Source: Isurus oxyrinchus
Lineage: Eukaryota
DNA length: 64,000 nucleotides
Direction of reading: 5' to 3'
Assembly (NCBI GenBank): GCA_026770705.1
Contig: JANJGN010000052.1
Coordinates: forward strand, 3,410,001 to 3,474,000
The position numbers and the translations under genes are program-made. This document shows positions 1 through 47,980 of this stretch, one piece after another; the stretch's first letter is position 1, and the number at the start of each line of letters is the position of its first letter. The notes beneath the pieces were generated by a model. The model did not search any database. It saw nothing but the letters and a program-made list of their open reading frames with translations, and was not told where the DNA came from.

Positions 1-240
1 GGGTCCGATGGTGGAACCATGTTAACTTGCGATTGTGATTCTTGGAGTGAAATGCTATGATCCCTCTAGACCTTGTATTCCATGTATTCCATGTATACCA
101 TATCACATACCAGATTCCGACACGTGCTCTCCCTACTAAATGTGCTGGATAACTGTAATTACATGGAATCTGTATACACGAACCTTCCTGCGCTGTCACC
201 TCTCGTGGAGTGTCACCTTTCCACTCTTGTGACAGTCCAA
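1..240 (-). CDS. Siglec-like V-set Ig exon V1 (3' part runs off the window start)
   Basis: Acceptor ctctccccag|TT GGA CTG at 240; open frame VGLSQEWKGDTPREVTAQEGSCIQIPCNYSYPAHLVGRARVGIWYVIWYTWNTWNTRSRGIIAFHSKNHNRKLTWFHHRT; paralogous to the other V exons. Confidence 0.9.
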
Positions 241-12000: not shown

Positions 12001-12369
12001 CAGAAACGTGAAGCTGGGTTACAGGGTAATAGTTATGGCTCGGACCATTGTCAAATTCTATTCTGAAAAAATAAGGTCCTGCATCTTCCCGTCTGATGTT
12101 GTTTATAATCAGGGAACAGTCGCCATCTTTCAGGTCTCCAGACAGCCGGGTCCGATGGCGGAACCGTGGTAACTCGTGACTGTGATCCTTGGAGTGAAAG
12201 GCAATGGGAGCCCAGGGAATCTGTGTCTCATTATTAAACCAGAGTCCACCTCGTGGTTGATTTTCCAAATGTGCTGGATAACTGTAATGACATGGAATCT
12301 GTACACACGAACCTTCCTGCGCTGTCACCTCTCGTGGAGTGTCACCTTTCCACTCTTGTGACAGTCCAA
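12001..12369 (-). CDS. Siglec-like V-set Ig exon V2 (essential Arg present; unit A)
   Basis: cag|TTGGA...TCT G|gtaagt, 369 nt, phase 1-1; EGSCVQIPC, GDCSLIINNIRREDAGPYFFRIE Siglec V-set signature. Confidence 0.93.
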
Positions 12370-23399: not shown

Positions 23400-23439
23400 C
23401 TTGGAGAAGTGACAGGAGGAAGTAAGATTTCCTGATCAT
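23400..23439 (-). CDS. Extra (tandem-duplicated) signal-peptide exon MIRKSYFLLSLLQ
   Basis: ATG at 23439, donor gtaata at 23399; preceded by its own 85-nt cassette at 23883. Confidence 0.7.
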
Positions 23440-24129
23440 TGTCCACTCCCAGGTATTTCATTGGTTCTCAAGCTGTGAAAGAGAAATGAGTTAATGAGAC
23501 CTCACCTCTTGCCTGACAGCTCTCGAGAGATCAGAACTGCTTTTAGACAATGTCTTCACAGAATAATTTCATTCTCTGTGGGATGATAGGTGCTCTGCAG
23601 AGAGTTACAAGGCTTTAAGAAAGTAAAACAATGAAGGACTTGCATTTCTATATCACCTTTCCCCTGCTCAGGACACCCCAAAGCTCTTGTCCCTGCTCTT
23701 CCCTCATCCCTTGAGCTAGAAAGATGTTCTGTACAACAGACTTGAGTCTCACACCCAGATCTCAATAACCTGTAGAAATCTTTCAAAGGCATCAATCATT
23801 GTGATCTGTCTTTATAAAGTCACAACGTCAACAAAGGACTTTGTTGGTGGTGGAAGTGAATTCCAATCGTTCTGTTACTTACCCAGGACCTGTCCGACTG
23901 CTCGCCTGGGGAGGGACTGCCCACCCGCTCTGCTTGGGCTGAATGACCTCTTCCTGTGCTGCTCCCTCTGTGTGTTTAATTAGAAAGGGTTGATGTGTCA
24001 CTGTGAGACAAAATGAGGAAGTGGTTAGTACCAAGTTAGAAAGCATCTCTTTGCCTCGCACAGTTAGAAAACTGTTAACCCTTTGCGTGCCAAGAATGTG
24101 GCTGAAGGGCCATCGACTGTTCACATGCA

Positions 24130-26226: not shown

Positions 26227-26343
26227 TTATAAATTCCCATAAACAGAATCCTTGGCAAAATCACAGTTTGCGTAAAGATCATCATCTGTATCAGGATTGA
26301 CTCCGCGGTTAGATTTCATTTCCAGATCCTTCTCATCTTTCTT
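26227..26343 (-). CDS. Last cytoplasmic exon with LYAN and ITIM-consensus SVYGNL
   Basis: ttctattacag|AAG AAA GAT...; KKDEKDLEMKSNRGVNPDTDDDLYANCDFAKDSVYGNL*. Confidence 0.88.
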   Translation of the reverse strand, partial: KKDEKDLEMKSNRGVNPDTDDDLYANCDFAKDSVYGNL

Positions 26344-29300
26344 CTGTAATAGAAACAGAAATGATCAGAGTGACAATTAGAGTGATCAGTGTTTAGTATT
26401 ATTGATCCAAATCGAAAATTCCACCCACAATAGATACATTAATTATTGATACTAAACAAGGTTTGATTATTGATACTGAACGGGGTTTGATTATTGATTG
26501 TGAATGGGGTTTGATTATTGATACTGAACGGGGTTTGATAATTGATTCTGAAGAGGGTTTGATTATTGATACTGAACGGGGTTTGATTATTGATTCTGAA
26601 TGGGGTTTGATTATTGATTCTGAACGGGGTTTGATTATTGATACTGAACGAGGTTTGATTATTAATTCTGAACGGGGTTTGATTATTGATTCTGAATGGG
26701 GTTTGAATATTGATACTGAACGGGGTTTGATTATTGATACTGAATGGGGTTTGAATATTGATTCTGAACGGGGTTTGATTATTGATACTGTACGGGGTTT
26801 CATTATTGATTCTGAACGGGGTTTGTTTATTGATTCTGAACGGGGTTTGATTATTGATTCTGAACGCGGTTTGATTATTGATTCTGAACGCGGTTTGATT
26901 ATTGATTCTGAATGGGGTTTGATTATTGATACTGAAGCGGGTTTGTTTATTGATAATGAACGGGGTGTGATTATTGATTCTGAACGGTGTTTGATTATTG
27001 ATTCTGAACAGGGTTTGATTATTGATTCTGAACGGGGTTTGATTATTGATTCTGAACAGGGTTTGATTATTGATTCTGAACGGGATTTGATTATTGATTC
27101 TGATCGGGGTTTGATTATTGATTCTGAAGGGGGTTTGATTATTGATACTGAACGGGGTTTAATTATTGATTCTGAACAGGGTTTGATTATTGATACTGAA
27201 AGGGGTTTGATTATTGATTCTGAACAGGGTTTGATTATTGATACTGAATGGGGTTTGATTATTGATTCTGAACGGGGTTTGATTATTGATACTGAACGGG
27301 GTTTGATTATTGATACTGAATGGGGTTTGATTATTGATTCTGAACAGGGTTTGATTATTGATTCTGAATGGGGTTTGATTATTGATTCTGAATGGGGTTT
27401 GATTATTGATACTGAACGGGGTGTGAATACTGATTCTGAACGGGGTTTGATTATTGATACTGAATGGGGTTTGATTATTGATATTGAATGGGTTTTGATT
27501 ATTGATTCTGAATGGGGTTTGATTATTGATTCTGAACGGGGTTTGATTATTGATTCTGAACGGGGTTTGATTATTGATTCTGAACGGGGTTTGATTATTG
27601 ATACTGTACGGGGTTTGATTATTGATACTGAATGGGGTTTGATTATTGATACTGAATGGGGTTTGATTATTGATTCTGAACGGGGTTTGATTATTGATTC
27701 TGAACGGTGTTGGGTGTGAGTTTGGTTGGGTTTGGGAGTGACTGTATAAAACGTTGCAGATACAGGACTGGAGCAGCCATATCAATAACCAGGCTACTGG
27801 AGCAGCTGAGAGGCTGGGGATCCTGTGGTGTGTGACTCACCTGATTCCTCAAAGCCCAACCACGCTCACAGTTTTCATAAACAGGACTTCGATGTTCATC
27901 AACACGATGGTTCGATTTGATTCCTGCTTTTCCCTTGCCTCTCTTCTGTAATAGAGATGGAAATGGACAGAGTGACAATCAACATGATGTGTATTCGGTG
28001 TTGGGTTTGATTACTGGGGAGAGAGTTCCAGATTTCCACTCCCCTTTGTGTGAAGAAGTGCTTCCTGACATCACCCCTGAACGGCCTGGCTCCAATCTGA
28101 AGTTCCGGCCCCCTTGTTCTGGACTCCACCCGACACCCACCACCCACCCCCACTCGAGGGAATAGCTTCTCTCTATCAACCCTATCGAGTGTTTAATCAG
28201 TTTGAACCCCTCAATTAGATCCCTCCTTAATCTTCTAGACCCGAGGGAATATAATCGTAGACTGTGTGTAACCTGTCTGCACAATTTAACCAGAAAGATG
28301 TTCTGTACAACAGACCTGAGTCTCACACCCAGATCTCAATAATCAGTAGAAATCTTTCAAAGGCATCAATCATTGGAATCTGTCTTTATAAAGTCACAAC
28401 ATCAACAAAGGACGGTGTTGGTGGTGGAAGTGAATTCCAATCGTTCTGTTACTTACCCAGGACCTGTCCGACTGCTTGCCTGGGGAGGAACTGCCCACAC
28501 GCTCTGCTTGGGCTGAATGACCTCTTCCTGTGCTGCTCCCTCTGTGTATTTAATGAGAAAGGGTTGATGTGTCACTGTGAGTCAAATGAGGAATTGGGGA
28601 ACAATTATGAAAACACTTTCATTGAAATGTAGGGCCTTAGTGTTGTGTTGTAAACAAACTGTTAACCCTTTGTGTCCTGACTCTGTGACGTGATTCCTGT
28701 GTAAAGCTGAGCAGTCGTTGAGCGAGTTTCAATTCACTGCTCAATCCAGCTGTTGAGGTGGATCTTCTGAAGCAGCAGATGTTGCTCAGCGCTCCTTAAA
28801 AATGTGCGATACTGAACAATGTGTAAGAGGACGAGAGAGAGAATGAGAAGGAGAGCATTAGTGGCGATAGGAGAGAGAGTGAATGAGAGAGAGAATGAGA
28901 AGGCGTGCATTAGTGGCAATAAGAGAGAGTGAATGAATCATGGAAAATGGAAAGAGATTGCATTCACTAACAAAAGAAAGGTTTTTATTTGTATAGCAGC
29001 ATTCACAAACTCAGGAGGTCAGAAGCTATTTTATGGTCCGGGTCAACACTGCCAGTTACAGGACTGAGTTGTGAAACAGTGAGTGTTGGATGAGATGTTA
29101 AACACTAGGTGAACATCAAAACTCTTCAGGGACTGCGAAGGGTTTTGGATTGTAAAAGGTGCTATAGAAATGCAAGTTCTTTCTATAAGGAGAGAAGTTT
29201 GAAGAAAACATTTTCAAAAACAACCAATTAAACCTTCACACTTACTTTCTCACACACTTGAAGATGAAGAATCCACTCAGTCCAACACTCAAACAGATTC

Positions 29301-32300
29301 CAGCTCCAAGCAATCCTGCTTTCCATTCATTGGAATCTCGCCCTGTAAAATCAGCCAATGAATGACTCCGGTACAGTTTGAGAATGGTTCCCTATGTACA
29401 TGTAGTAATTCTGAACTTGTGAAGTGATATTGTCTATGCATGAAAGGTCTATACAAATAACATTTATCTATGTAATATTTATTGATAATATCCATGTACA
29501 TGCAGGTTTCTATAAGGAGGATTCACATATAACAGAGGTGCCAAGCTGCTGAGGTGACACACAGGACTACATACACACCAAACAGCGGAAACAACATGCT
29601 ATAGACAGAGCAAAGCGATCCCACAACCAACGGGTCAGATCTAAGCTCTGCAGTCCTGCCACATCCAGTCATGAATGGTGATGGACAATAAGGATCTAAC
29701 AGGAGGAGGATGTTCCACAAATATCCCCATCCTTAATGATGGGGGAGCTCAGCACATCAGTGCAAACGACAAGGCTGAAGCATTGGCAACCATGTTCAGC
29801 CAGAAGTGCTGAGTGGATGATCCATCTCGGCCTCTTCCAGAGGGTCCCAGCATCACAGATGTCAGCTTTCAGACAATTCGATTGACTCCACGTGACATCA
29901 GGAATCAGCTGATGATACTGGATACAGCAAAGGCTATTGGCCCTGGCAACAACCCAGCAACAGGAAATAATGTGGCTACAAGAGCGGGTAAGAGGCTGGG
30001 AACTCTGCAGTGAGTAATTCAACTCCTGACCCCCCAAAGCCTGTCCACCATCGGACAAGGCACAAGTCAGGAGTGTGATGGAATAATCTCCACTTGGCTG
30101 GATGAGTGCAGCTCCAACAACACTCAAGAAGCTCGACACCATCCAGGAGCAGCTTGTTTGATCGACAGCCCAGCCACCAGCATAAACATTCATACCCTCC
30201 ACCACTGGCACACAATGGCAGCAGTGTGCACCATGTACAAGATGCGCTGCAGCAACTCACCAAGGCTCCTTCGACAGCACCTTCCAAACCCTTAACCTCT
30301 TCCACCAAGACAGTTCCAAGTCAGTGAGGTGTGTGACTTGGAGGCGAACTTGAGGTGGTGGTCTGCCCTGGGACTTGGAACTATATCGGCCGTTCCTTCA
30401 CCGTCTCTGGGTCAAAATCCTGGAACTCCCTCCCTAACAGCACTGTGGGTGTACCTACACCACATGGACTGCAGTGGTTAAAGAAGGCAGCTCACCACCA
30501 CCTTCTCAAGGGGCAGTTACAGATGGGCAATAATTTCTGGCCTTGTCAACAATACTCACATCCCATGAGCTAATAATAAGAGAACGTTCAATTCTGTGTA
30601 ACTCACGTTCCACAGTGATGTTTATGAATCCCTCCACTGCTCCATGTTCATTCTCTGCCACACACTGATAGTCTCCAGTGTCCCTGGATGTAACGTGAGG
30701 AATCACCAACCACAGCTCATTGTTGGAACTTGTTCTGTTCATTGGGACATTAAGATGTCGCCACGTCAGGTTAGAAGCTGGGAAGCTCTCGACAGAGCAG
30801 ATTATCACTGCAGAATTCCCCTCAATTATATTGATCGATGAAGCGTTAATCATATCAAGAGAAGTAATTGAGAGATTCTGTGGTGCATCTATAAACAAAT
30901 AAACATCAATTAAGTTACACTGACTGTGAAGCACTTTGAAAGACACTTAGAATGTGAAAGGTATGATCTCAATGTAGGTTCATTTTCACAAAGCCCGTAA
31001 TCCAGGCAGAGACTTCAGTTCAGTACTGAGGGAGTGCTGCACTGTCAGAGGGTCAGTACTGAGGGAGTGTTGCACTGTCAGAGAGTCAGTACTGAGGGAG
31101 TGCTGCACTGTCAGAGAGTCAGTACTGAGGGAGCACTGCACCGTCAGAGGTTCAGTGCTGAGGGAGTGCGGCACTGTCAGAGGGTCATTACTGAGGGAGT
31201 GCTGTACTGTTGGTGGGTAAGTACTGAGGGAGTGCTGCACTGTCAGAGAGTCAGTACTGAGGGAGTGCTGTACTGTCAGAGGTTCAGTACATAGGGACAG
31301 CTGCACTGTCTGATGGTCAGTCCAGAGGGGGTGCTGCACTGTTGGAGGATCAGAACTCGGGGGGTGCTGCAGTGTGGGAGGGCCAGTACTGAGGGAGCAC
31401 TGCACTGTTGAAGAGTCAGTACTGAGGGAGTGCTGCACTATCGAAGGTTCAGAACTGAGGGAGTGCTGCAGTGTTGGAGATTCAGTATTTAGGGACTGCT
31501 GCAGTGTCCGAGGCGAATTTGTATCAGTTAAAGACTATTGATTTGTTGCTAAACACAATGCAGTTGTGGGATCTTGCAGTGTACTATGTAGAGCTTTCTA
31601 GCTAATGTAGATGGAAGGGTGTCCGTTCTTACCTTGCACAGTTAGTACGAGGGTCCGCTCCGATGAAACAGATGGATATCTCACTCTGCAGCTGAGAGTG
31701 TGTCCGTGGTGTTTGAGTGATGGGATCAGGGTCAGAACAGAAGTATAGGTCAGAGTGACACCATGCTGAGTTACAGTGTTTGAGACTGATCCAGGTACGT
31801 CAGTGGGAGTGTCCCAGGTTAAGACAGGTGCTGCTGTTCCATTGCACGTTGTGTTGAAGGTGCAGCTTACATCCACAGGCTTTCCTGCAATAATTTCCGC
31901 AGGGAATATCGTGGGTTTATCTGTGAAATCTAACAGACAGAGAATGGATCCTTTTAGAGAAATATAACGTGAAGCATCAGTTCAAATAGAAACCACAGTC
32001 CCACAAGAGAAAGCACTTTTACAAGGATGATATCAGAACTGAGAGGTTACAATGATCAGGAGAGCATTTCCTGCTTTGACACTTTGGTGTTTCTGTCTCT
32101 CAGCTTAACACACGTTCACTCCGAGACACTTGAACTGATAATAGTGGGTGAGGGTGGAGGAGCAGACCAGAGTTTGGAGTGCACTACCCCATCATTCACT
32201 CAGCGATCTGGGCCATTTATTACTTTGCAATTTGTGGGAGCTTGCTGTGCGCAAATTGGCTGCTGTGTTTCTCACATTACAACAGTAACTACAATTCAGG

Positions 32301-35300
32301 AATCAGCTCATTGGCTGTGAAGTGATTTGGTACGTTCTGAGGTGGTGAAAGGTGCTATAGAAATGTGAATCTTTCTTCTGTCGATATGTCAGGCTTCGAG
32401 ACATTAGAGATTAGGATTAGAGAGATTGATGGGAGTGGATAACCTGATAACATTGATGGACACAGTCAATATATTTAATCATTGATATTAAAGTGAGTAT
32501 TAGAGGTTGCTTTAGGACTGAACTGGAAGCTATCACCAGGATATCGAGAATCAGACAGTGTGTTATAATAAGCTGTGTTTTGTGTTAATATGTAAACGTC
32601 ATAGTTTGTGTTATTTCCCATTGAGTGTTGAATGTGAAATGTTGAGTAATTATAACACAGCACTTACCAGAAACGTGAAGCTGGGTTACAGGGTAATAGT
32701 TATGGCTCGGAGCATTGTCAAATTCTATTCTGAAAAAATAAGGTCCTGCATCTTCCCGTCTGATGTTGTTCATAATCAGAGAACAGTCGCCATCTTTCAG
32801 GTCTCCAGACAGCCGGGTCCGATGGTGGAACTGTGGTAACTCGTGACTGTGATCTTTGGAGTGAAAGGCTATAGACAATGTTCTCCGTTCCTCATTATGA
32901 AACCAGACTCCAACTCGTGGTTGGTTTTCCAGACACGATGGATAACTGTAATGACATGGAATCTGTACACAGGAATCTTCCTGAGCTGTCACCTCTCGTG
33001 GAGTGTCACCTTTCCACTCTTGTGACAGTCCAACTGTGGAGAGAAATCTCAATATTTATCTCTGGATGTTTTGTGGATCCACTGAACCCGATATTTACAG
33101 ATGAGACAGAATTTGGAGGATGGTTAATACTGAGGAGAATGGCAACAAATTATTTTGGCAGGATGAATAGAAAAACAGAATATTATTTAAATGGAGAGAG
33201 GCTGCAGAATGCAGTACAGAGGGATCTGGGTGTCCTTGTACATGAATCACAGAAAGTCAGCATTCAGGAACACCACGGAATGAGGAAGGCAAGTGGAATG
33301 TTGGCCTTTATTGCAAAGGGATGGAGTATAAAAGGAGGGAAGTCTTGCAACAGCTGCACAGGGCGTTGGTGAGAATGTAACAGGATCATTGTGTACAGGC
33401 AGTTCAGAGAAGCTTCACTGGGCTGATTCCTGGGATTAAAGGGTTTATCCTGTGAGGAAATGTTGAGCAGGTTGGGCCTGTATCCATTGGAGTTTAGAAG
33501 AATGAGGGGTGACCTTATTGAAACATATCCGATTCCGAGGGGGCTTGACAGGGTGGATGCTGGGAGGATGTTTCCCCCTCGTGGGGGAATCTAGAACCAG
33601 GGAGCACAGTTTCGGAATGAGGACTCTCCCATTTAAGACTGAGATGAGGAGGAATTTCCTCTCTCAGAGGGGCGCTAGCCTGTGGAATTCTCTTCCCCAG
33701 AGAGCAGTGGAGGCTGGGCCATTGAATAGACTCAAGGCTGAGTGAGGCAGGTTTTTGATCGACAAGGGAGTCAAGGGTTTGGGGGACAGGCAGGAAAATG
33801 GAGTTAAGGACACCACCAGATCAGTGAGAGCAGGCTCTAGGGGCCGAATGGCCTGCTCCTGTCCCTATTTCTTATGTTCCTACATTCTTACCTTCTTAAA
33901 ATATTAAAGCTGCAGAATAAACATGCAAGTGACTGACCCGCTCGACCCACCTTCCATCTGGGGGTCCCATGGGGAGGACCCTTCCTGAGCCAGATCCACC
34001 AGCCAACATGGTCTGGATCCGAGCACTGGAGACACGGTGGGGAGTGACTAACAGGCTCCTTGTGACAGGCCCCGTCTGTCCAATGGCTGGCTTTCAGCTG
34101 CCATGGCCAGAGTGGTCCTTGCTAAAACCGGCTCAGGACAGGCCAGGACCCCTGTGCAGACCCCCTCCAGCACGGCAGCCTCTGTACAAACCCCTCATGC
34201 GCTTGTGGAGAGACACAAACAAGGCTGCACATTACCGAGGAGAATCCCCTCTACGGACTAAGGGGCTGACTCATCACCTTAAACTCAGCAAATGAGGAGG
34301 CTCTCGCTCGGTATCAGGGCTTGGCATTGGCTCAATAAAAATAATCAAATTACATTTTGGTCAGAAATCTAAGGATGTTGTACATTCCCTCAAAAATAAG
34401 ACTCAAGGCTGAAGGCACAACTGCCGATGTTGGAGTTTTGGGATCGGGGGATGGTCAAGAGGCTTGGATTGGAGGAGCGCAGAGACCTCATATGGTTGGA
34501 GTGACTGGAGGAGGTTACAGAGATAGGAAGTGTTGTACGGTCTGAAAAAGTTAAGAGAGATTGGGAGAGTGTAGGGTCTGGAGGAGATTACAGAGACAGT
34601 GAGGGTTGTAGTGATTAGAGGAGTTACAGAGATAGGGAGGGTTGTAGCGGCTGGAAAAGTTAAGAGAGATTGGGAGAGTGTAGGGTCTGGAGGAGTTTGC
34701 AGAGGTAGGGAGGGTTGTAGTGACTGGGGCAGGTTACAGGGGCAGGGAAAGTTGTCGGGACTGGAGCAGGCTACAGAGATACGGAAGCTTTTAGGGGCAG
34801 GAGGAAGTTACAGAAATAGGGAGGGTTGTAGTGGCTGGAGGAGGTTGCAGAGATTGGTAGGTTTGTTTTGGCAGGATGAATTTACAGCTATAGGGAAGTG
34901 GTAGAGAATTGAAGAGGTTACAGAGAATGGGATGATTGTAGATACTGGAGGAGGACGAGGAGATTACAGGGATAATGAGGAAACAAAGATGAAAATTTGG
35001 ACATTGAGACTTTGCTTGACCAGGAGCCAGTCTCGGTCATCGAGCAGAGCGGGTGATAAGGGAACGGGACTTGGTGTGAGTAAGGACGTGGTCAGCAGTT
35101 TTGGATGGCCTCAAGTTTATGGAGTGTAGAGCATGTGTTGGAACAGTCGAGTGTGGAGGTAATGAAGGTGTGGATGAGGGTTTCAGCAGCAGATGAGCTG
35201 AGACAGGGTGATGTCGTGCGATGTTACGGAGGTGGAAATAGACGGTGTTAGTGAGGGCGCAAATATGAGGCCGGAAGCTCATCTCAGGATCAAATGGGAC

Positions 35301-38300
35301 AACAAAGCTGTGAACAGATTGGCTTCAATCTCAGAGAGCTGTCAGGGAGATGAATGGAGTTGGTAGCGAGGGAACAGAGTTTGGAGCGGGGAATGAAGAC
35401 AATGGCTTCAGTCTTTCCAATATTTAATTGGAGGGAATTTCTGCCCATCCAGTACTGGATGTCGGATAAGCAGCCTGAAAATAAGCAGCAGTGGAGGAGT
35501 CGAGAGAGGTGGTGGTGAGGTAGAGCTGGGCATCCTCAGTGGACAGGTGAAAACTAACACTGTTCAGATGATGCTGCAAAGCCATTGCAAGTGATTCTCT
35601 GGCTACGATGAGATGGATAAGAATGGAGCCAGGGGAGAGCAGTCCCACCCAGCTGGACGACAGTGGAGAGGTGTTTGAGGAGGATGGTGTGGTCGAGCGT
35701 GTCAAAGGCTGCAGACAGATCGAGAAGGACGAGGAGGGAAAGTTGACCTTTGTCACAGTCACACAGGATGCCATTTGTGACCTTGATAAGAGCTGTTTCA
35801 GCACAGTGGCTGGGGTGGGAACCTGATTGGAGGGATTCAAACATGGAGATCCGGGAAAGATGGGAACGGATTCGGGAGATGGAAACACGTTCAAGGACTT
35901 TGGAGGGGAAAGAGAGGCTGGAGATGGGACGGGGGTTTACACGGACAGTGTGAGGGGTGAAAGGTGTAGTGGGGAGGAGATACTTCACTCAGGGGGGAGG
36001 TGTCATCACCCCTCAGCTCGGTTTACGTTACAGCTATGATGTGGATTCAATCACACACAATAAGCTCATGGATCTGGGAGCAGAAATAGACAAATCATTA
36101 AAAATAGTGACGCTGGTTAACACGGCCAAAAAACAAGCAAATCAAACACTATTATTTCCCATTGAGTGTTGGATGTGAATTGGTGAGTAATTATAACACA
36201 GCACTTACCAGAAACGTGAAGCTGGGTTACAGGGGAAACGTTCTGGCTCGGACGATTGCCAAATTTTATCGTGAAAAAATAAGGTCCTGCATCTTCCCGT
36301 CTGATGTTGTTTATAATCAGGGAACAGTCGCCATCTTTCAGGTCTCCAGACAGCCGGGTCCGATGGCGGAACCGTGGTAACTCGTGACTGTGTCCCTTGG
36401 AGTGAAAGGCTATAGACCATTTAGACCATTTGTTCCGTATGTACCTTCTCATTTTCCAGATTCCGACATGTGGTTTCTTTACCAAATCTGATGGATAACT
36501 GTAATGACATGGAATCTGTACACACAAACCTTCCTGCGCTGTCACCTCTCGTGGAGTATCACCTTTCCACTCTTGTGACAATCCAACTGGGGAGAGAAAT
36601 ATCAATATTTAACTCTGGATGTTTTGTTGATCCACTAGACTCGATATCCACCCCCTCCATCACTCGGGCACAGTGGCTGCAGTGTGGACCATCTACAGGA
36701 CACACAATGAACTCCACAAGATATCACACCAGATGGAAGAGAATCCTGGACACAAAAGCGGAAAAGTCCATTCTACATTGGTTCATGGTCCTCAGGACCC
36801 TGTTTGTGCAGAAGTCTGCTCTCCAACAGAACTGAAGTTGGGACAATGCATTTGGAATTCCACTGTCCGGGGCATTGGGTTAACTTGCTGATTTTGTTTT
36901 AAATCTAACATCTATTTTTGGTCTGTTGCCTTTAAGGGACAGTAACTGGGAGTCAGGTTAATTAGGAATTTTAGGAGTTATGATAGCAGTCTTGTAGTTA
37001 CGTATGTGCTTGAAATCCTTTATTTTGATGACAAATATGTTAATTTATTGTTTTAAATCTCTAAAGGTATTGGTGGAGTTATTGCTTCTGGATTAAGTGC
37101 ACACATCTCATAATAAATACAAATTGCAAAATCATTATGATAGTGTGACCACCTTTCTCTCAGGGACTTGGTCTGCCTAGCACACATCACCTGCCAAGTG
37201 ATAACACTGTTGTAATATGCCTTTCAGGGACAGCAGCATGACATCACTCGAGGGGAAGTGTGTCTTGTGATTTTTAGGAACTGGTGTTCGCTTAAGTAAG
37301 TTCTATGTGTATTTGTGTGCGTTAGGCAAAAGGTCTATCTTTAAGTTCAAGTTTAGTTTGTATTTCTATATTTGGGTGTTGAGAAAAGGGGGAACTTGAG
37401 TTAAAAAGAAGCCAGCATTCCATTGAGGTTTTATGACTGTCGAAGGGAAGTCAAAACAAATACAAGGTGTAAGAAACTGTGCTGTTGCCTAGCAACAGTG
37501 ATCCAGAGGGAAGGACCCACAGAGACAGAGAAAAACAGAAAAGTACTTTCAGTTCTGTTGAAAGGAGTTGCCAGGAGAAGCAGCAAAGGAGCGGGACAGA
37601 TAGTCAGTCCCAAAGTAAAGAAGAAGCCAAAACCATCGAGTGGAACAGGAGAAAGGGCCCAAGAAAACCTTCTCGTCAAATCTGGAAAAGGCCCTGTTAA
37701 GTGAAGTTAAGAGTGAGGAGCAGAAGAAGGCTCCAAACATAAAGGGAGAAAGCAGCAGGACACAGGCCTAAAGCAAAATAGGCTTGTGAGAAGCCAGAAG
37801 ATCCTAGGAGACACCACAGGTTGGTGACTCATTACTATGGCCATGTGAAGCCATGGTGTTCCATTGACACGGCCGAGCATTGGAGAGACAGGGCGTGGAA
37901 GGAAGGCTGAATGCACGTGGCGATCCAGGGGGCAGGAACATGGGAAGGAGAGTTTGAAATAGTGAAAGTGGTCCCGTGTGGAAGGTGTCTGAGTGAAAGT
38001 GTCATGTTGGAGAAGATTCCAAAGTGAGTTCTTGCAGAGTGGAGATTGGAAACTCTCATATGAAAGAAGCTTTTCAGTGAGACTGGTTGGCTCACAGTGC
38101 AACAAGCGTCTGGGGACAGATGAGACATAAAAGTTGTTTCAAGTGGGCTCTGCCACTTGCTTTCAGAATGTTGTGTCCCTGACCACAGGTCGTCTATTGG
38201 TTTACACGGACTGTGTACTTAGTGTGAACATGAGAATATAAGATAGTTATCGTAATTTGTGTTCTACTTATGTATCTGTAAAGGTATAGGTCTGGGTGAA

Positions 38301-41300: not shown

Positions 41301-43603
41301 GAAGTACAAGGCTTGTCAAGAGGCTTGTCAAAGAACCACTGATTCCACAGGAAATTCCTGCCCATTCTTAGTCCAAAATCTGAATCCTTTCATGTCCATG
41401 TCACTGACTTCATCGTCATTGTTGACAGCTTTACCAGATATCCCGTTATTCAAAAATAGCACAACACACCAAGCACAACTTCTGCACACACTCGAAGCAC
41501 TATTTTCAGTTTCTTTGGTGAACCTAGGGACATGATTACAGATAATCTGGAATATCAATCACACTACTTCTTCTCCTCATTACCCCAGATCTAACAGCCT
41601 AGCTGAATGAATGATTCACACAGTGAAATCCCTAATTCTCAAATGTAGACAGGCCAAGCAAGATCCACACATTGCAATGTTACATCTGAGATCAACACCT
41701 ACAACTGCAACTTTGTTAAATTCATTCATGGGATGTGGGAGTCACTGGCCAGGCCAGGATTTATTACCCATCCCTAATGTAAGAGTCAACCACATTGACG
41801 TGGAGTCTGGAGTCACATGTCTGCCAGATAATTTTGTTCCCTAAAGGGCACTGGTGAGCCAGGTGGGATTTCTAACAATGGTTTTGTGGTCATCACTAGA
41901 CTTTGAATTTCATCTTTTTATTAAATTCAAATTCCATCATCTATTATGGCCGGATTTGAACCCATATTCTCAGGACATTACCCTGGGTCTCTGAATTACT
42001 CGTCCAGCAACAATACCACTACACCATCACCTCACCTTATTCCATCACTGACAGAGATCATGTTTGGTGTGCCAGTAGTGACCAATTTCGCTACTCTTAC
42101 CCATTCTACTCTCTCAGAAACCAGAGGGCAACTTTTAAAACTACAAGAGAAGATAAGGAATGTTCATGATAAAAATGGAGGTGCAGAGTTGCCAAGTTTA
42201 CAGTTGGGACAAGTTCACATCCAGGATCCCACAGAAGGTTCATGACCACCAGCCGAGGTGACAAGGAATTGTTCAGAACCAAGGGCCTATGGAGTCAAAC
42301 ACACAAGGGCACAGCGGTGAGGTGGAACCGAGGATAACTCAGATCCATTCCCGCTCCTATTCTATCGAGGAGCAGATCCCACGTGAAATCAGGATCACCA
42401 TCCAAGGGTGACAATCCCACAGATCACGGTGAGCAGTTAAAGACACCTCCAGACAAGGTAACCAGCACAAGATCTGGGTGTACCAGAAGGTTAAATCCAC
42501 ACTTGAGAGACTCAAATATTCAACAGTTCCATGCACTTATGTAATTGTCAATAAATATGAACATGATATGAGAAACCGCTTGTTCCCTGCCCTTCTGAAA
42601 GATCCATTCCTGCAGCAGGAGCCTGAAGAGTTACTGATAAGAGATTTAATTTATCGGATTGTAGAATGATCCGGAACTGAAGGAAGCCATTTGGCCCATC
42701 GAGCCTGTGCTGGGCCTTTGAAAGATCTGTCCAATAAGTCCCACTCTAACCTCTGCTCTCTCCTCCACAGCCCTGCAAAATGTCCCCTTCAAGTATTTAT
42801 CCAGTTCCCCTTCTGAAAGTTCCTGTTGAATCTGCTTCCACCGCCCTTGCAGGCAGTGAGTCAATGGTCTCTCTCTGAGCTGCAAAGTGATAAGTTTCAA
42901 TGAAATATAAACTCTGCAGCAGATCAGAAACAATCATGATAACTCAGAATATTTGACAGTTTTACATACAGACAGCTTTGCCTCCCTTCTCTCTATCAGT
43001 TATCTTGCTATCTTATCGAATTTTCTAGCATGGTGAGAAGGGACAGGAAGTGTGACGCTGAACTGCCTGTCTAATCTAAGAGCTTCTGTGTTGTCTTCAT
43101 GGGAAATTCTGATGAAAATCAGCAAGAGAGAAACATTTCAGGGCATTGATATCGGAGTGCTTGCATCAGGATAGACTTTATCCCCCAGTTTTTATCCCTG
43201 CTTCTCTATTCAGCCGATCGCTCCCCTGTCACTCGCTGACCTGCACTGGCTCCCAGTCCAGCAATAACTCAATTTTCAAAATCTCTTCATTGATTCCTTA
43301 TCCCTCCATCCTCCCTCTCCACTCCCTATCACTGTCACCTCCTCCAGCCCTGAAACCCTTTGAGGTCTCTGCTGTCCTGCAGTTCTGCTGTCAGACAGGG
43401 AGTCAGTGTATATCAGTGAGCACAGGGGTGATGGGTGAATGGGACTTGGTGTGAGTTTGTACACTGGCTCACTGCTGAATCGGTTCCCTATCAGAGCTCA
43501 GTAAGAATGTTCTTTTACAAAGACTATTCACCATAAGTCTGTCCAAGCTGACGATGTTATTACCTTGGAGAAGTGACAGGAGGAAGTAAGATTTCCCGAC
43601 CAT
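26227..43603 (-). CDS. Unit C: complete inhibitory-type Siglec-like receptor gene, L-V(Arg-)-V(Arg+)-C2-Ig-TM-cyt(ITIM)
   Basis: join(43564-43603, 36209-36586, 32668-33033, 31633-31929, 30607-30888, 29246-29342, 28457-28541, 27841-27945, 26227-26343); all GT-AG, phase-compatible, no internal stops seen. Confidence 0.8.
26440..27710. repeat. 24-bp minisatellite TTGATTATTGATTCTGAACGGGGT, ~53 copies (intronic)
   Basis: Visible tandem array; gives the spurious 418-aa GLIIDSER ORF. Confidence 0.97.
27841..27945 (-). CDS. Cytoplasmic exon with VYEN motif
   Basis: tctctattacag|AAG...CAG|gtgagt, 105 nt, phase 0-0; KRGKGKAGIKSNHRVDEHRSPVYENCERGWALRNQ. Confidence 0.85.
28457..28541 (-). CDS. Candidate first cytoplasmic exon (85 nt, phase 2-0)
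   Basis: Reads (K)GSSTGRGHSAQAERVGSSSPGKQSDRSW and bridges the TM exon (phase 2) to the VYEN exon (phase 0); an alternative phase 2-0 candidate exists at 28667-28766. Confidence 0.55.
29246..29342 (-). CDS. Transmembrane exon, uncharged core (unit C)
   Basis: ttttacag|GG CGA...AGA AA|gtaagt; RRDSNEWKAGLLGAGICLSVGLSGFFIFKCVRK. Confidence 0.9.
29520..30510 (+). mobile_element. Decayed non-LTR retrotransposon fragments
   Basis: Degenerate RT-like remnants (..QVRSVME, SAAPTTLKKLD, WNSLP); paralogue at 50455-51490. Family not determined. Confidence 0.6.
30607..30888 (-). CDS. Membrane-proximal C2/I-set Ig exon (unit C)
   Basis: 282 nt, phase 1-1; DAPQNLSI...VIICSVESFPASNLTW...DTGDYQCVAENEHG, CD22/MAG-like. 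Confidence 0.92.
31020..31510. repeat. 30-bp CAGTACTGAGGGAGTGCTGCACTGT minisatellite
   Basis: Visible tandem units. Confidence 0.93.
31633..31929 (-). CDS. Siglec-type domain-2 C2-set exon (unit C)
   Basis: 297 nt, phase 1-1, donor gtaaga. Confidence 0.92.
32668..33033 (-). CDS. V-set exon V3 (Arg present, extra B-C loop Cys)
   Basis: 366 nt; IPCHYSYPSCLENQPRVGVWFHNEERRTLSIAF...DAGPYFFRIEF. Confidence 0.93.
33090..33885 (+). mobile_element. CR1 LINE 3' fragment
   Basis: YYLNGERLQNAVQRDLGVLVHESQK, WNSLPQRAVEA; paralogue at 60250-61080. Confidence 0.85.
34500..34975. repeat. Degenerate ~38-bp purine-rich tandem (GGAGGAGGTTACAGAGATAGGGAGGGTTGTAGGGACT)
   Basis: Visible units; longer array at 61160-62150. 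Confidence 0.8.
34990..35990 (-). mobile_element. L2-clade LINE reverse transcriptase fragment
   Basis: ORF 35554-35988 RPISSLSFPSKVLE...ETALIKVTNGIL...LVLLDLSAAFDTLDH. Confidence 0.85.
36209..36586 (-). CDS. V-set exon V4 (essential Arg replaced by Thr; basic C-C' loop)
   Basis: 378 nt; VGIWKMRRYIRNKWSKWSIAF...DAGPYFFTIKFGNRPSQNVSP. Confidence 0.93.
37211..38502 (+). mobile_element. Putative LTR, copy 2
   Basis: Paralogue of 870-2180. Confidence 0.45.
39306..42360 (+). mobile_element. Degenerate Ty3/Gypsy-type retrotransposon internal region, copy 2
   Basis: gag zinc knuckle (39657-39977), aspartic protease motif AKIDTGASANI (~40560-40600), integrase-like remnant SPHYPRSNSLAE*MIHTVKSLILKC (~41570-41650). 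Confidence 0.8.
43564..43603 (-). CDS. Signal-peptide exon MVGKSYFLLSLLQ (unit C)
   Basis: ATG at 43603, donor gtaata at 43563. Confidence 0.85.
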
Positions 43604-45671
43604 TGTCCACTCCCAGATATTCCTTTAGCTTCTGACTCTTAAACTGTGAAAGAGAAAGGAGTTAATGAATCCTCACCTCCTGTCCGACAGCTCTCGAGAG
43701 ATCAGAACTGCTTTTAGACAATGTCTTCAAAGACTAATTTGGTTCTCTGTGGGATGATAGGTGCTCTGCAGAGAGTTAAAAAGCTTTAAAAAAATAAATC
43801 AATGAAGGACTTGCATTTCTATAGCACCTTTCACCACCTCAGGATGTCCCAAAGCTCATGTCCCTGCTCTTCCCTCATCCTTTGAGCTAGAAAGATGTTC
43901 TGTACAACAGACCTGAGCCTCACACCCTGAACTCAATAATCAATAGAAATCTTTCGAAGGCATCAATCATTGGAATCTGTCTTTATAAAGTCACATCATC
44001 AACAAAGGACGGTGTTGGTGGTGGAAGTGAATTCCAATCGTTCCGTTACTTACCCAGTACCTGTCCGACTGCTCGCCTGGGGAGGAACTGCCCACACACT
44101 CTGATTGAGCTGAATGACCTCTTCCTGTGCTGCTCCCTCTGTGTGTTTAATGAGAAAGGGTGGATGTGTCACTTTGAGACAAAATGAGGAAGTTGGATCA
44201 AAGTGACAGAGCAGCTCATGTTTTGAGATGTTGGTGAACTGTTAACCCTTTGTGTCCTGACCCTGTGGTGATATTTTTGCTCACAGGTGGACAGTCATTG
44301 ACCAGGAATTTCTCCTGTGGGTCAGTGGGTTTCACAGCCAAATTCAGGGGGACAGAACGTTGTGGGGTTCAAGACCCCATTCAGGGGACGTCTGCCCCAC
44401 AGTGTAGACTGAAACTCCCCAGTGTCGGTACTGAGCAATTGCTGCACTGTCGGATGGTCATTACTGAGCGCGTGTTGCACTATTGTAAGGTCAGTACTGA
44501 GGGAGATCTCCACTGTTTGAGGGTCAGTACTGAGGGAGTGCTGCACTGTCAGAGGGACATTAATCAGGGAGTGCTGCAATGTTGGAGGATCAGTACTGAG
44601 GGAGTGCTGCACTGTTGGAGGGTCAGTATTAAGGTGCTGATTTACAAGACAGGACAATGGATTAGGAGCCCTCAGAACTCCCCCCATTATCACCGTCATG
44701 AATCACTAATTAGCCTAACATTCCTGTCTGCTCTTCAACACGGCTGATTGGCTAATCTGATTCAATCTGATTGGTGCACTTTGTATGTTCATTGTCTAAG
44801 GAATCTCTTTGGATCCTCATTGTCTAAGGAATCTCTTTGAATCCTCATTGTTTAAGGAATTTCTTTGGATCCTCATTGTCTAAGGGATTATTTCTGATCC
44901 AAACCCCATATTGTTGTATTGTTGATTCCGATGCAGCATTGTAGACTGACTTGTCCCCAAGCTCAGCACTGACCCTACTCCAGCAGACACTGTGAAACAC
45001 ACTAACACAGTGCCTCTAGCCTGAGCTCTGCATGTGTCAAGAGCAAAGACAAATATGCAAACTGAATATTGACACCTTTACACACGGACAGCTTTACCTT
45101 CCTTCTCTCTTTCAGTTATCTTGCTCCCTTATTGAAGTATCTAGCATGGTGAGAATGGACAGGAAGTGTGACACTGAACAGCCTGTCTATTCTAGGAGCT
45201 GCTGTGTTGTCTTCATGGGAAATTCTGATTAAAATCAGCAAAAGACACAAATTTCATTCCTTTGCTATCGGAGTCCAAGCATCAGGATAGACTTCATCCC
45301 CCAGTATTTATCACTGTTTCTCAACTCAACACCTCACACCCTCCGCCACTCGCTGACCTGCACTGGCTCCCAGTCCAGCAGAGCCTCGAGTTTAAGACTC
45401 TCATCCTCAATTTCCATTCCCTCCATTCCTCTTCTCCAATCACTTTCTCCTCCAACCATGCAAACCTCAAAGTCCTCTGCTATCCTCCAATTCTGCTGTC
45501 AGACAGGGAGTCAGTGTATATCAGTGAGCACAGGGGTGATTGTTGAATGGGACTTGGTGTGAGATTGTACACTGGCTCACTGCTGAATCTGTTACCAGTC
45601 ACAGCTCAATAAGAATGATCTTTTACAAAGACTATTCACCATAAATCTATCCGAGCTGACGATGATATTAC

Positions 45672-45711
45672 CTTGGAGAAGTGACAGGAGGAAGTAAGAT
45701 TTCCTGATCAT
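45672..45711 (-). CDS. Extra signal-peptide exon MIRKSYFLLSLLQ
   Basis: ATG at 45711, donor at 45671; paralogue of 23400-23439. Confidence 0.7.
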
Positions 45712-47980
45712 TGTCAACTCCCAGATATTTCATTGGTTCTCAAGCTGTGAAAGAGAAATGAGTTAACGAGACCTCACCTCTTGTCCGACACCTCTCGAGA
45801 GATCAGAACCACTTTTAGACAATGTCTTCACAGAATAATTTCATTCTCTGTGGGATGATAGTTGCTCTGCAGAGAGTTACAAGGCTTTAAGAAAGTAAAA
45901 CAATGAAGGAGTTGCATTTCTATGTCGCCTTTCACCTGCTCAGGACATCCCAAAGCTCATGTCCCTGCTCTTCCCTCATCCCTTGAGCTAGAAAGATGTT
46001 CTGTACAACAGACTTGAGCCTCACACCCAGATCTCAATAATCAGTAGAAATCTTTCAAAGGCATCAATCATTGGAATCTGTCTTTATAAAGTCACAACAT
46101 CAACAAAGGACGGTGTTGGTCGTGGAAGTGAATTCCAATCGTTCCGTTACTTACCCAGGACCTGTCCGACTGCTCGCCTGGGGAGGAAGTGCCCACACGC
46201 TCTGCTTGGGCTGAATGACCTCTTCCTGTGCTGCTCCCTCTGTGTGTTTAATTAGAAAGGGTTGATGTGTCACTGTGAGACAAAATGAGGAAGTGGTTAG
46301 TACCAAGTTAGAAAGCATCTCTTTGCCTCGCACAGTTAGAAAACTGTTAACCCTTTGTGTGCCAAGAATGTGGCTGAAGGGCCATCGACTGTTCACATGC
46401 TTTAAGCTCGAGGTGGTTGAACGGGCCTCCTCCTGTTCCTGTGTAACAGGCTCGAGGGGCTGAATGGGCCTCCTCCTGTTCCTGTGTAACAGGCTTGAGG
46501 GGCTGAAAGGCCTCCTCCTTTTCCTGTATAACAGGCTCATGGGGCTGAATGGCCTCCTCCTGTTCCTGTGTAACAGGCTCGAGGGGGCTGAATGGCCTCC
46601 TCCTGTTCCTGTGTAACAGGGTCGCGGGGCTGAATGTCCTCCTCTCATTAAAAATAAATACTGCAGATGTTGTAAATCTTCAATAAAAATGAAAAATGTT
46701 GCCTTAACTCAGCAGGTCTGGCAGCAGCTGTGGAGAGAGAAACAGAGTTTTTGCTTATAGACTCTGAAGAAGGGTCATACGGACTCGAAATGTTAATTCT
46801 GTTTATCTCTCCTCAGATGCTGCCAGACCTACTCAGTTTCTCCAGCATTTTCTGTTTTTATTTCAGGTGCTCTCTTGTTCCTGTGTAGCAGGTTCGAGGG
46901 GGCTGAATGGCCTCCTCCTGTTCCTATTCAATGGGCAGTCAAAGTATGCATCTGATTTTGGACCTCAAACCCAATTCTCTCCTCAGGACATTGACAGATG
47001 GAGAGACCAGTTACAGATCAATGCAGGAGGATTATTTATTTTCCCAATCTTTTATCCAAGAATGTCATCAAACATAGAGCAGAACCAGGATCAAGGATGT
47101 TGGTCTCTGTGATCTGAAACACATCGCACAGTCCACCCATCCACTCAGCCTTCAGAATGGATGCTAATTGTACTCTCCAAGTGTGAAAGACTAAAATTGA
47201 GGTTTATTGCAGCTATATCTCATTCTGTTATCAAAGCTGTCTCATCCATCCATGAACTTCTGAAGAAGGTAAACCTGCAACCAATTTTTCACATCATAAT
47301 TTCCAATGTTCACTGGCAACATCAATGTAAACATGTCACGCTGAAATGATGTCCTCCTACCAGTGGTGGCACTGTAGCACATCTGTTCTCCTCTGAGCTG
47401 CAGAGAATTTCTCAAACCTCCAAACAAATTGTTTCCCTGTTTCCCAGATTGCTGTTAGTTTTGCTGATAACGATGAAGTGTAAAATCCAAATATATATCT
47501 GAAAATACATTTGATTACAAAATGCTGAGTAAATTTTGCCTATCTCCTCTGCTCCAATTATCCACCGATCCTGCATTTCCTGAAGTCTACACTGGCTGAT
47601 GAATATTCTGTAAACACTGACTGACAGGAAGGTGAATAACAGAATGAAAATTAACTCATAATCATGGACACGGGATTGAATTTGTCCGTTCTGTCCTGGT
47701 ACATCATCGAACGATATCCAAAGACATTTACAATCAGAATGGAGAGAAGGATGTTTCCAACAGGGAGGGACAATTCTGAAGGAGGATGTTCGAATTGAAA
47801 CCCACAGACAATCATCCTGGATAGATCATTCCGAAGAAATTCCATCAGATTGTAACAAGAGGTTTAAATCTATTTCCTGGGAGTGAGTTCCTGTGGATAT
47901 TAGGAAGGTAAGTTAGAGTTTTGAATGATTCTCCCGTTCTGTATTCTCCCTACACTGTGTGTGTCTCATTCTTGCTCAGT

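What the first reader, a model, noticed from the sequence alone, without database searches (positions are those of the whole stretch)
32668..36586. Tandem V-V architecture with an Arg-less outer domain and Arg-containing inner domain
Seen: units C and D each have two V exons in series with no leader exon between them. The outer ones (V4, V6) read YFFTIKF and the inner ones (V3, V5) YFFRIEF. Established: this F-strand Arg is essential for sialic acid binding; nearly all Siglecs have one V-set domain, and Siglec-12 is the known two-V exception. Inference: the outer domain recognises a non-sialic ligand, convergent with Siglec-12. Since all exons are phase 1-1, skipping V4 could also switch the receptor into a sialic-acid binder.
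Basis: partly seen in the sequence, partly recalled or inferred. Interest (0 to 1): 0.8.

Follow-up and report, generated by a model that had tools for sequence, protein, structure and literature searches.

The report
Shark two-headed Siglec receptor genes
Two neighbouring shark immune-receptor genes of the sialic-acid-lectin (Siglec) type each carry two sugar-binding-type exons in a row, and the outer one has lost the arginine that normally grips sialic acid; the double-head layout is already predicted in other sharks, so only the arginine loss is new.

Summary
Outer V exon 36586-36209 reads YFFTIKF and inner V exon 33033-32668 reads YFFRIEF. Unit D repeats this (63763-63386, 60194-59826). 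All are open, phase 1-1, with AG/GT sites. The 3.2-kb intron between them holds transposon debris and no credible leader. The family leader (MVGKSYFLLSLLQ) lies about 7 kb upstream of the outer V.

The Thr aligns with the essential Arg of solved Siglec-5. The double-V layout is not rare here. RefSeq models of 8 shark and ray species join 2-4 V domains, many under the name "Siglec-12". This scan already reported a seven-V gene 65 kb beyond this window (s1-865389).

What is particular is the polarity. 24 of 26 multi-V relatives keep Arg in the first V, and none has Thr. So R-to-T is a recent, derived change shared by units C and D.

I found no RNA junction joining the outer V to the inner V; only inner V to C2 was seen spliced. 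A non-sialic ligand and a splicing switch remain untested. The Siglec-12 analogy fits the architecture only, because ape Siglec-12 binds through its outer V.

Verdict: a new variant of a known kind, of moderate interest.

The parts
36209..36586 (-). Outer V-set exon of unit C (V4), 378 nt, phase 1-1, YFFTIKF; Thr at the canonical Arg position
32668..33033 (-). Inner V-set exon of unit C (V3), 366 nt, phase 1-1, YFFRIEF, with an extra Cys in YPSCLENQ
   Evidence: its donor at 32668 is used in RNA contigs
33034..36208 (-). Intron between V4 and V3, 3175 nt. It holds a reverse-transcriptase fragment (35988-35557), other repeats and a tandem-repeat block around 34494-34965. No family leader copy.
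63386..63763 (-). Outer V-set exon of unit D (V6), 378 nt, YFFTIKF
59826..60194 (-). Inner V-set exon of unit D (V5), 369 nt, YFFRIEF, with the extra Cys
43564..43603 (-). Leader exon MVGKSYFLLSLLQ + G, donor gtaata, phase 1. It is the nearest intact leader upstream of V4 (about 7 kb). Its use by gene C is inferred.
45672..45711 (-). Second intact leader copy, MIRKSYFLLSLLQ + G; an alternative candidate leader for gene C
31633..31929 (-). C2-set exon 1 of unit C (297 nt, Pfam C2-set_2). Its acceptor at 31929 is joined to the V3 donor in RNA contigs.
30607..30888 (-). C2-type exon 2 of unit C (282 nt; Pfam Ig_3 / I-set)
29246..29342 (-). Transmembrane exon of unit C (uncharged span AGLLGAGICLSVGLSGFFIF); predicted
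28457..28541 (-). 85-nt cytoplasmic exon of unit C; predicted
26227..26343 (-). Last coding exon of unit C, ending ...DLYANCDFAKDSVYGNL*, with the ITIM-like motif SVYGNL; predicted
12001..12369 (-). Single V exon V_B (Arg kept, no extra Cys). Its upstream flank is of the outer type and its downstream flank of the inner type. Used as a comparison for the duplication.
1..240 (-). Outer-type V exon of the next unit (V_A), cut by the window edge before the F strand

Best explanation
Units C and D are tandem copies of a shark Siglec-type inhibitory receptor gene. The predicted layout is: leader, a roughly 7-kb intron, outer V, a 3.2-kb transposon-filled intron, inner V, C2-set exon, one (C) or three (D) further Ig exons, an uncharged transmembrane exon, and a tail ending in an ITIM-like motif.

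The two V exons come from an old local duplication of the exon plus about 55 nt of intron on each side. In relatives they are translated in series as a V-V ectodomain.

In the common ancestor of units C and D the outer V changed at the sialic-acid site: FFRIEFD became FFTIKFG through four nucleotide changes, all amino-acid-changing. So the outer head has most likely lost canonical Arg-dependent sialic-acid binding. The inner head keeps the canonical pocket and is the probable sialic-acid reader.

Shown here: the exon anatomy, the residue identities, the homology, the derived state of Thr, and the inner-V-to-C2 splice. Inferred: the tandem V4-V3 splice in this species, which leader is used, loss of binding, and inhibitory signalling.
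For: Exon anatomy and phases.

Siglec identity: the 17 best solved-structure hits for V3 and for V4 are all Siglec chains. Arg or Thr aligns with the Arg of YFFRVE in Siglec-5. Pfam gives V-set, Ig_CD22 and C2-set_2.

Duplication unit: in alignment A1 the homology between outer and inner copies ends about 55 nt outside the exon on each side. V_B carries the outer-type 5' flank and the inner-type 3' flank.

Tandem translation in relatives: RefSeq models from Cetorhinus, Carcharodon, Mustelus, two Scyliorhinus species, Chiloscyllium, Mobula and Hypanus hold 2-4 V domains after a single leader MIGKSYFLLSLLQ. Their junction residues match those predicted from the V4 donor and V3 acceptor.

Conserved inner-V signature: the extra B-C-loop Cys is present in the last V of 19 of 26 multi-V relatives. 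It is present in 1 of 26 first V domains and absent from the single V_B (alignment A2: C172 nearly invariant).

Thr is derived: the first V has Arg in 24 of 26 relatives, Lys in 1, Ser in 1 (a fragment) and Thr in 0. V4 and V6 group with the Arg-bearing first V domains of Cetorhinus and Carcharodon (SH-aLRT 87, not starred).

No leader in the intron.

RNA: a GT..AG joint from 32668 to 31929 (inner V to C2) is present in runs X6 and X8. V4-like exon bins have depth while the flanking intron bins have little or none.

Tail motif.
Against: No V4-to-V3 joint and no leader-to-V4 joint was among the 15 of 251 joints or the 24 of 1402 loose ends that displayed. Tandem inclusion of V4 in this species is therefore not shown.

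Contigs were laid at 90% likeness or more, so V4-like coverage may come from paralogues.

The relatives' V-V proteins are automatic gene models, and I could not see their RNA support.

V4 versus V6 gives dN/dS 1.75 from only 18 differences (2.5 synonymous, 15.5 non-synonymous). That fits relaxed constraint as well as diversifying change.

Loss of sialic-acid binding is inferred from one residue plus neighbouring changes, by analogy with mammalian Siglecs.

The leader lies 7 kb away and there are two candidates.

Confidence: 0.55

Rival explanations
1. Re-tooled outer head. The outer V is not merely disabled. It has acquired a different ligand specificity, non-sialic or bound in a non-canonical way, through its extended basic and aromatic C-C' loop and its changed F and G strands. 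The receptor would then read two ligands.
For: 25 of the 26 outer-specific fixed differences (all but nucleotide 6) fall in two patches: the C-C' loop region (nt 106-170 of the exon) and the F strand (nt 316-328). V4 adds five more changes within nt 333-352 (YY to VS, creating an NVS sequon). Core fold residues (both B-strand Cys, Trp, DCSL, DAGPYFF) are intact in V4, V6 and the partial V_A. Exon divergence between V4 and V6 (18/378, 4.8%) exceeds the adjacent well-aligned intron (25/1199, 2.1%; Fisher p = 0.01). dN/dS is 1 or more in all outer-outer comparisons.
Against: Against all well-aligned intron (64/2091) the excess is not significant (p = 0.12). There are few substitutions. Gene conversion among paralogues can mimic this pattern, as V3/V5 show (dS 0.109 against about 3% in the intron). 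No ligand data exist. That the C-C' loop sets specificity in Siglecs is recalled knowledge and was not tested here.
Confidence: 0.2
2. Alternative use. The two V exons are mostly used one at a time, by skipping or mutually exclusive splicing. The main products would then be single-V receptors with either a Thr head or an Arg head.
For: Both exons are phase 1-1 with near-identical splice sites. The window also holds a single-V unit, V_B. Only the V3-to-C2 joint was seen.
Against: The inner V carries a conserved extra Cys that first-position and single V domains lack. This fits a partner domain sitting upstream. Relatives' models join both V domains. Nothing seen here shows leader-to-V3 or V4-to-C2 joints.
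Confidence: 0.15
3. Decaying exon. V4 and V6 are dispensable or dead exons, always skipped, that have not yet picked up a stop codon.
For: dN/dS is about 1 or above. The key Arg and neighbouring pocket residues are lost. There is no RNA proof of inclusion.
Against: Three outer-type copies (V4, V6, partial V_A) are all open with intact splice sites, and their indels are in frame. The changes cluster on the binding face instead of being spread evenly. V4-like exon sequence, without its flanking intron, is present in runs that hold spliced RNA. With only 18 differences between V4 and V6, the lack of a stop codon is weak evidence on its own.
Confidence: 0.1

Closest known systems
Elasmobranch multi-V Siglec-like gene models in RefSeq. 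Examples: 'sialic acid-binding Ig-like lectin 12' of Cetorhinus maximus XP_078389734, Carcharodon carcharias 'lectin 13 isoform X2' (P0163), Mustelus asterias XP_078093145, and Scyliorhinus canicula XP_038670873.
   Same: Same leader (MIGKSYFLLSLLQ). Same V-V junction residues. Same extra Cys in the inner V. Same C2-set exon, 90-94% identical over 99 residues in Mustelus P0005. Inner V5 is 94% identical to the second V of Carcharodon P0169.
   Different: Their outer V keeps Arg in 24 of 26, with Lys in one Carcharodon model; none has Thr. In the ray four-V models the polarity is the reverse: the outer V keeps Arg and the inner ones carry Lys or Ser. The window's own species is not among them; the best match to V4 is 73-74% identical.
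Mammalian Siglec-12 / human Siglec-XII
   Same: [quoted passage not shown] The human protein has lost the critical Arg yet still signals (PMC7876704 and PMC6288428, passages read).
   Different: The origin is independent. V4 and V3 are 70-74% identical to each other and share intron flanks, while they match mammalian Siglec chains only at E of about 1e-13. In apes the terminal V carries the functional Arg and binds Neu5Gc, and in humans the critical Arg is mutated in both V domains (PMC7876704). Here only the outer V has lost it.
Arg-mutated primate Siglecs (Roman-numeral Siglecs; Siglec-5/14 of great apes)
   Same: A lineage-specific change of the essential F-strand Arg in an otherwise intact receptor (PMC6288428, passages).
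   Different: Those are single-V receptors, so the whole receptor loses sialic-acid recognition. Here a second Arg-bearing V remains in the same predicted chain.

Membership tests
Siglec family (I-type lectins) | A V-set Ig domain most similar to Siglec V-sets | tested here: met
   Pfam V-set at E 4e-12 and Ig_CD22 for both V3 and V4. The 17 best solved-structure hits for each are Siglec-5, -8, sialoadhesin, CD33, Siglec-10, MAG and Siglec-7.
Siglec family (I-type lectins) | The essential Arg on the F strand (YFFR.E) | tested here: met
   Inner V3 and V5, and the single V_B: the Arg aligns with the Arg of YFFRVE in Siglec-5 2zg2.
Siglec family (I-type lectins) | The essential F-strand Arg in the membrane-distal V | tested here: not met
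   Outer V4 and V6 have Thr at that aligned position.
Siglec family (I-type lectins) | Siglec cysteine pattern: two Cys in the B strand (C.QIPC) and one in the E strand (DCSL) | tested here: met
   Present in all five complete V exons and aligned with CVLVPC / NCSL of Siglec-5. Which Cys pairs with which is recalled knowledge and was not tested.
Siglec family (I-type lectins) | C2-set domains, a transmembrane span and a tail with ITIM-type motifs | tested here: met
   C2-set_2 at E 7e-9 and Ig_3 at E 7e-13. Uncharged TM and SVYGNL at the C-terminus. The ITIM consensus is recalled. The exon joins beyond V3-to-C2 are predicted.
Siglec family (I-type lectins) | Binding of sialylated glycans | not testable with these tools
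   Needs recombinant protein.
Orthologue of mammalian SIGLEC12 | Shared origin of the V-V duplication | tested here: not met
   Outer and inner V share intron flanks and 70-74% identity. They group with elasmobranch first and last V domains. Mammalian chains match far more weakly. Caveats: no Siglec-12 sequence was in the tree, and concerted evolution could inflate the likeness.
Elasmobranch multi-V Siglec-like genes | A single leader, then two or more V exons in series, with an extra B-C-loop Cys in the C2-adjacent V | tested here: met
   Exon order and leader. Extra Cys in V3 and V5 but not in V4, V6 or V_B. The same holds in 19 of 26 relatives' last V.
Elasmobranch multi-V Siglec-like genes | The V exons are actually spliced together in RNA of this species | tested here: inconclusive
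One search showed V3-to-C2 spliced.

The most novel reading that the evidence does not exclude
A polarity-reversed two-headed Siglec. The membrane-distal head would have been re-tooled for a non-sialic or non-canonically bound ligand, for instance a pathogen or an anionic glycan. The changes would be Arg to Thr, Glu to Lys, Asp to Gly, and a long Arg/Lys/Trp-rich C-C' loop that differs between paralogues. The membrane-proximal head would still read self sialic acid. One inhibitory receptor would then integrate two inputs, and exon skipping could tune it.
Probability: 0.2. Interest if true: 0.75.

Novelty: new variant of a known kind. Interest (0 to 1): 0.45.

Why it matters
Papers on Siglecs state that Siglec-12 is the only member with two V-set domains (PMC7876704, passage). 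Sharks and rays show that multi-head Siglec-type receptors arose independently and are common there. So far this stands only in automatic annotation and in this scan's notes; I found no paper on it.

These two genes add a natural experiment. Within one chain, one head has lost the canonical arginine and the other keeps it. Testing them would show whether an inner V can bind sialic acid, and what an Arg-less Siglec head does. The second question is also open for human Siglec-XII.

Tried and rejected
1. A first leader scan of the V4-V3 intron required at least 8 of 10 hydrophobic residues and returned 0 candidates. The family's true leader scores only 5 of 10, so that negative was void. I repeated the scan calibrated on the three true leaders (after a script error).

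2. From the BLAST identities (about 90%) I first took the C/D intron divergence to be about 10%. A direct alignment showed that figure came from a misaligned tandem-repeat block. The well-aligned intron differs by 2-4%, which reversed my reading of the exon rates.

3. A word search with the V4 exon, hoping for transcript-derived fragments that cross the V4-V3 junction, gave only 3 hits. All were RefSeq models of other sharks.

4. The RNA lay gave the V3-to-C2 joint but not the decisive V4-V3 joint. Its lists are truncated: 15 of 251 joints, 24 of 1402 loose ends and 31 of 7974 pieces were shown.

5. The runs are only guessed to be RNA. The GT..AG joint shows that spliced RNA is present in X6 and X8. 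X4 and X7 gave nothing useful on the V exons.

6. I considered that V4 and V3 might belong to two different genes. I rejected this because the homology between their flanks ends 55 nt upstream of the acceptor and no leader lies between them.

7. The tree is a quick tree of 122 columns. Only 11 of 52 inner branches are starred, and the groupings I cite have supports of 87 and 91 (not starred).

8. Supplementary files of papers were not opened. The whale-shark paper lists Siglec families only in a supplement (PMC8455134, one passage), which might bear on earlier counts of shark Siglecs.


Full report
WHAT IS IN THE SEQUENCE.

The finding's two blocks are exons on the minus strand. V4 (36586-36209, 378 nt) and V3 (33033-32668, 366 nt) are open. 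Both enter and leave in phase 1, follow ttctctcc(c/a)cag, and end in G|gtaagtgc. V4 translates to ...DAGPYFFTIKFGNRPSQNVSP... and V3 to ...DAGPYFFRIEFDNAPSHNYYP....

A tblastn of the V exons against the window found six V-type exons, all on the minus strand: 240-1 (cut by the edge), 12369-12001, V3, V4, 60194-59826 (V5) and 63763-63386 (V6). V6 repeats YFFTIKF and V5 repeats YFFRIEF.

IDENTITY.

Pfam calls both exons V-set (E about 4e-12) and CD22-like first Ig. Against all solved structures, the 17 best hits for each exon are Siglec chains: Siglec-5, -8, sialoadhesin, CD33, Siglec-10, MAG and Siglec-7. The Arg of V3 and the Thr of V4 sit opposite the Arg of YFFRVE in Siglec-5. That this Arg is the essential sialic-acid contact is established knowledge (PMC6288428, passages).

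Downstream exons were located with relatives' proteins and read at their splice sites:
- a C2-set exon (31929-31633; Pfam C2-set_2);
- an Ig_3/I-set exon (30888-30607);
- an uncharged transmembrane exon (29342-29246);
- an 85-nt cytoplasmic exon (28541-28457);
- a last exon ending ...DSVYGNL* (26343-26227), which is an ITIM-like motif by the recalled consensus.

All searches were made exon by exon.

NO LEADER BETWEEN THE V EXONS.

The family leader was identified from relatives (MIGKSYFLLSLLQ). Intact copies that end in phase 1 with donor gtaata lie at 43603-43564, 45711-45672, 23439-23400, 21313-21274 and 13269-13230. None lies in 33034-36208.

A formal scan calibrated on the true leaders lists 10 strings in unit C's intron and 9 in unit D's. 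None is signal-peptide-like, none reaches the true leaders' donor score, and several lie in a reverse-transcriptase fragment (RVT_1).

The alignment of the five exons with their flanks (A1) shows that homology between outer and inner copies ends about 55 nt upstream of the acceptor and about 55 nt downstream of the donor. The duplication therefore copied the exon alone. The single exon V_B has the outer-type upstream flank and the inner-type downstream flank. It is either the undoubled state or a collapse of two exons into one.

The nearest leader upstream of V4 is about 7 kb away. Its use by gene C is inferred.

RELATIVES.

A search of 1.84 billion representatives with V4 gave 1005 hits at E up to 0.001 and 27 at E up to 1e-30. 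The best hits match V4 in 2-4 stretches. They are RefSeq models of sharks and rays, many named 'sialic acid-binding Ig-like lectin 12'.

A word search with the V-V part of the Cetorhinus model gave 95 proteins at E up to 1e-20 among 688 candidates. Of these, 22 cover at least 82% of the V-V query. They come from 8 species: Mustelus asterias, Cetorhinus maximus, Carcharodon carcharias, Scyliorhinus canicula, S. torazame, Chiloscyllium punctatum, Mobula hypostoma and Hypanus sabinus.

Several of these models show at the V-V junction exactly the residues predicted from the V4 donor and V3 acceptor (HVS-V-GLSQEW). Others show those of V5 (VS-A-EPSQEW).

The window's own species is not in these collections. 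The best match to V4 is 73-74% identical, and V5 is 94% identical to the second V of a Carcharodon model.

CENSUS OF THE KEY RESIDUES.

Among 26 fetched multi-V relatives (per-domain table):
- The first V has Arg in 24, Lys in 1 (Carcharodon P0170), Ser in 1 (an N-terminally cut fragment) and Thr in 0.
- The last V has Arg in 21 and Lys in 5; the five are all ray models.
- The last V carries an extra Cys in the B-C loop (YPSCL) in 19 of 26. The first V does so in 1 of 26.

V3 and V5 have this extra Cys; V4, V6 and V_B do not.

In a quick tree of 55 V domains, V4 and V6 group with the Arg-bearing first V domains of Cetorhinus and Carcharodon (support 87). V3, V5 and V_B group with last-position V domains (support 91). 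Neither branch is starred, so this is suggestive only.

Together these results say three things. The outer and inner types are old. The V-V chain is a conserved product. The Thr of V4 and V6 is a recent, derived change.

HOW THE OUTER EXON CHANGED.

Outer-specific fixed differences number 26. All but one lie in the C-C' loop region (nt 106-170, including two in-frame insertions) or in the F strand. Four F-strand changes turn FFRIEFD into FFTIKFG. V4 alone adds five changes within nt 333-352, which turn YY into VS and create an NVS sequon.

V4 versus V6 has 18 differences, 2.5 synonymous and 15.5 non-synonymous, giving dN/dS 1.75. V3 versus V5 gives 0.54, and outer versus V_A gives 1.0-1.1.

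The well-aligned parts of the V4-V3 intron differ between units C and D by 2.1% (first 1200 columns) to about 4% (last 900 columns). The exons differ more: 4.8% for V4/V6 and 7.1% for V3/V5. Fisher tests give p = 0.01 against the adjacent intron, p = 0.12 against all well-aligned intron, and p = 0.0004 for V3/V5.

So the V exons do not evolve more slowly than their introns. This fits diversifying change or gene conversion between paralogues. For the outer V alone it also fits relaxed constraint. The numbers are too small to decide.

RNA.

No run is on record as RNA for this stretch; the kinds are guesses. I laid four runs on 31500-37400.

Runs X6 (one contig, 100 letters on the shorter side) and X8 (two contigs) show a GT..AG joint from 32668 to 31929. 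This is the predicted V3 donor joined to the C2 acceptor, so these runs hold spliced RNA and the inner V (or a copy at least 97% alike) is expressed.

V4-like exon bins have depth (X8 in 36228-36424; X6 in 36425-36621), while the neighbouring intron bins have 0-24. The lay accepted 90% likeness, so paralogues may be the source.

No V4-V3, leader-V4, leader-V3 or V4-C2 joint was among the rows shown. Most rows were not shown.

COMPARISON WITH WHAT IS KNOWN.

[quoted passage not shown] It also states that chimpanzee Siglec-12 binds Neu5Gc through the Arg pocket of its terminal V, and that humans carry mutations of the critical Arg in both V domains. PMC6288428 (passages read) gives R122C in the N-terminal V and lists other Arg-mutated ape Siglecs.

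The shark genes resemble Siglec-12 in architecture only, and by independent origin. Their polarity (outer head without Arg, inner head with it) is the opposite of functional ape Siglec-12 and of the ray four-V models.

I found no paper on multi-V Siglecs of cartilaginous fish. The searches were 'Siglec' + 'shark' (325 papers, 15 listed, none on this), 'Siglecs' + 'cartilaginous fish' + 'CD33-related' (2 papers, unrelated) and 'Siglec' + 'elasmobranch' (6 papers, unrelated). I saw search listings only, apart from one passage of PMC8455134. Subscription journals are not covered.

This scan has already reported multi-V Siglec genes in the same genome. Note s1-865389 describes seven V exons 65 kb beyond this window. 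Its follow-up says annotation elsewhere shows two to five heads and that no paper describes them.

VERDICT.

The V-V architecture is real at the DNA level and conserved in relatives, but it is already in automatic annotation and in this scan's earlier notes. The new element is the derived Arg-to-Thr outer head sitting above an Arg-bearing inner head in two paralogues. Its meaning (a disabled head, a re-tooled head, or a skipped exon) is untested.

Two tools that would have helped were closed: structure prediction and relatives' genomic loci.

Noticed in passing
window 17581-21210 versus 9030-13005: A recent copy of the V_B unit (9030-12031 matches 17581-20582 at 97.6%; 12380-13005 matches 20584-21210 at 94.9%). 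In it the V exon is cleanly missing except for its last ~31 nt. An intact leader (21313-21274) and C2 exons remain.
   Followed up: partly
window 17114-17248 (-): An exon matching the arginine-bearing 'activating-type' membrane anchor of a Scyliorhinus torazame model (P0006 residues 603-647, 76% identity), downstream of the V-less copy. Earlier notes of this scan describe the same exon type elsewhere in this genome.
   Followed up: no
window 51536-54323 (-): Unit D carries three tandem copies of the second Ig exon (54323-54033, 53081-52791, 51814-51536; period about 1267 nt) where unit C has one. They are separated by CA-type microsatellites.
   Followed up: partly
window 43564-43603, 45672-45711, 23400-23439, 21274-21313, 13230-13269 (-): Five intact leader exons, two in the unit D-to-C gap and three in the unit C-to-A gap. 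Each gene therefore has more than one candidate first coding exon.
   Followed up: partly
window 7926-13269 (-): Compared with the D-to-C interval, the interval before the next outer V (240-1) has V_B, a C2 exon and part of a second Ig exon inserted between the leader and the shared block 9035-7926. This is the layout noted by s1-869177. Whether these exons join the next gene is untested.
   Followed up: no
window 28457-28541 and copies at 23883-23963, 21764-21856, 13720-13800, 49341-49421, 46155-46235, 44054-44140 (-): The 85-nt cytoplasmic exon recurs upstream of the leaders (tblastn hits). This agrees with note s1-869176.
   Followed up: no
window 59826-60194 versus 32668-33033: The inner V exons of units C and D differ by 7.1%, against 2-4% in their intron. 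The C-C' loop of V5 resembles V_B rather than V3, which looks like a gene-conversion patch.
   Followed up: partly
window 36209-36260 (-): V4 alone has five clustered changes that replace YY with VS in the G-strand region and create an N-V-S glycosylation sequon.
   Followed up: partly
window 6009-7169 (-) and 35557-35988 (-): A long open frame of 387 codons with reverse-transcriptase-like motifs (not scanned against Pfam), and a shorter RVT_1 fragment inside the V4-V3 intron.
   Followed up: partly
window 26439-27711, 48193-48601, 14078-15765, 31017-31513: Large minisatellite arrays (self-match offsets in steps of 24 nt and 33 nt) in the 3' parts of and between the genes. An N run at 54852-54985 was left untouched.
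   Followed up: no
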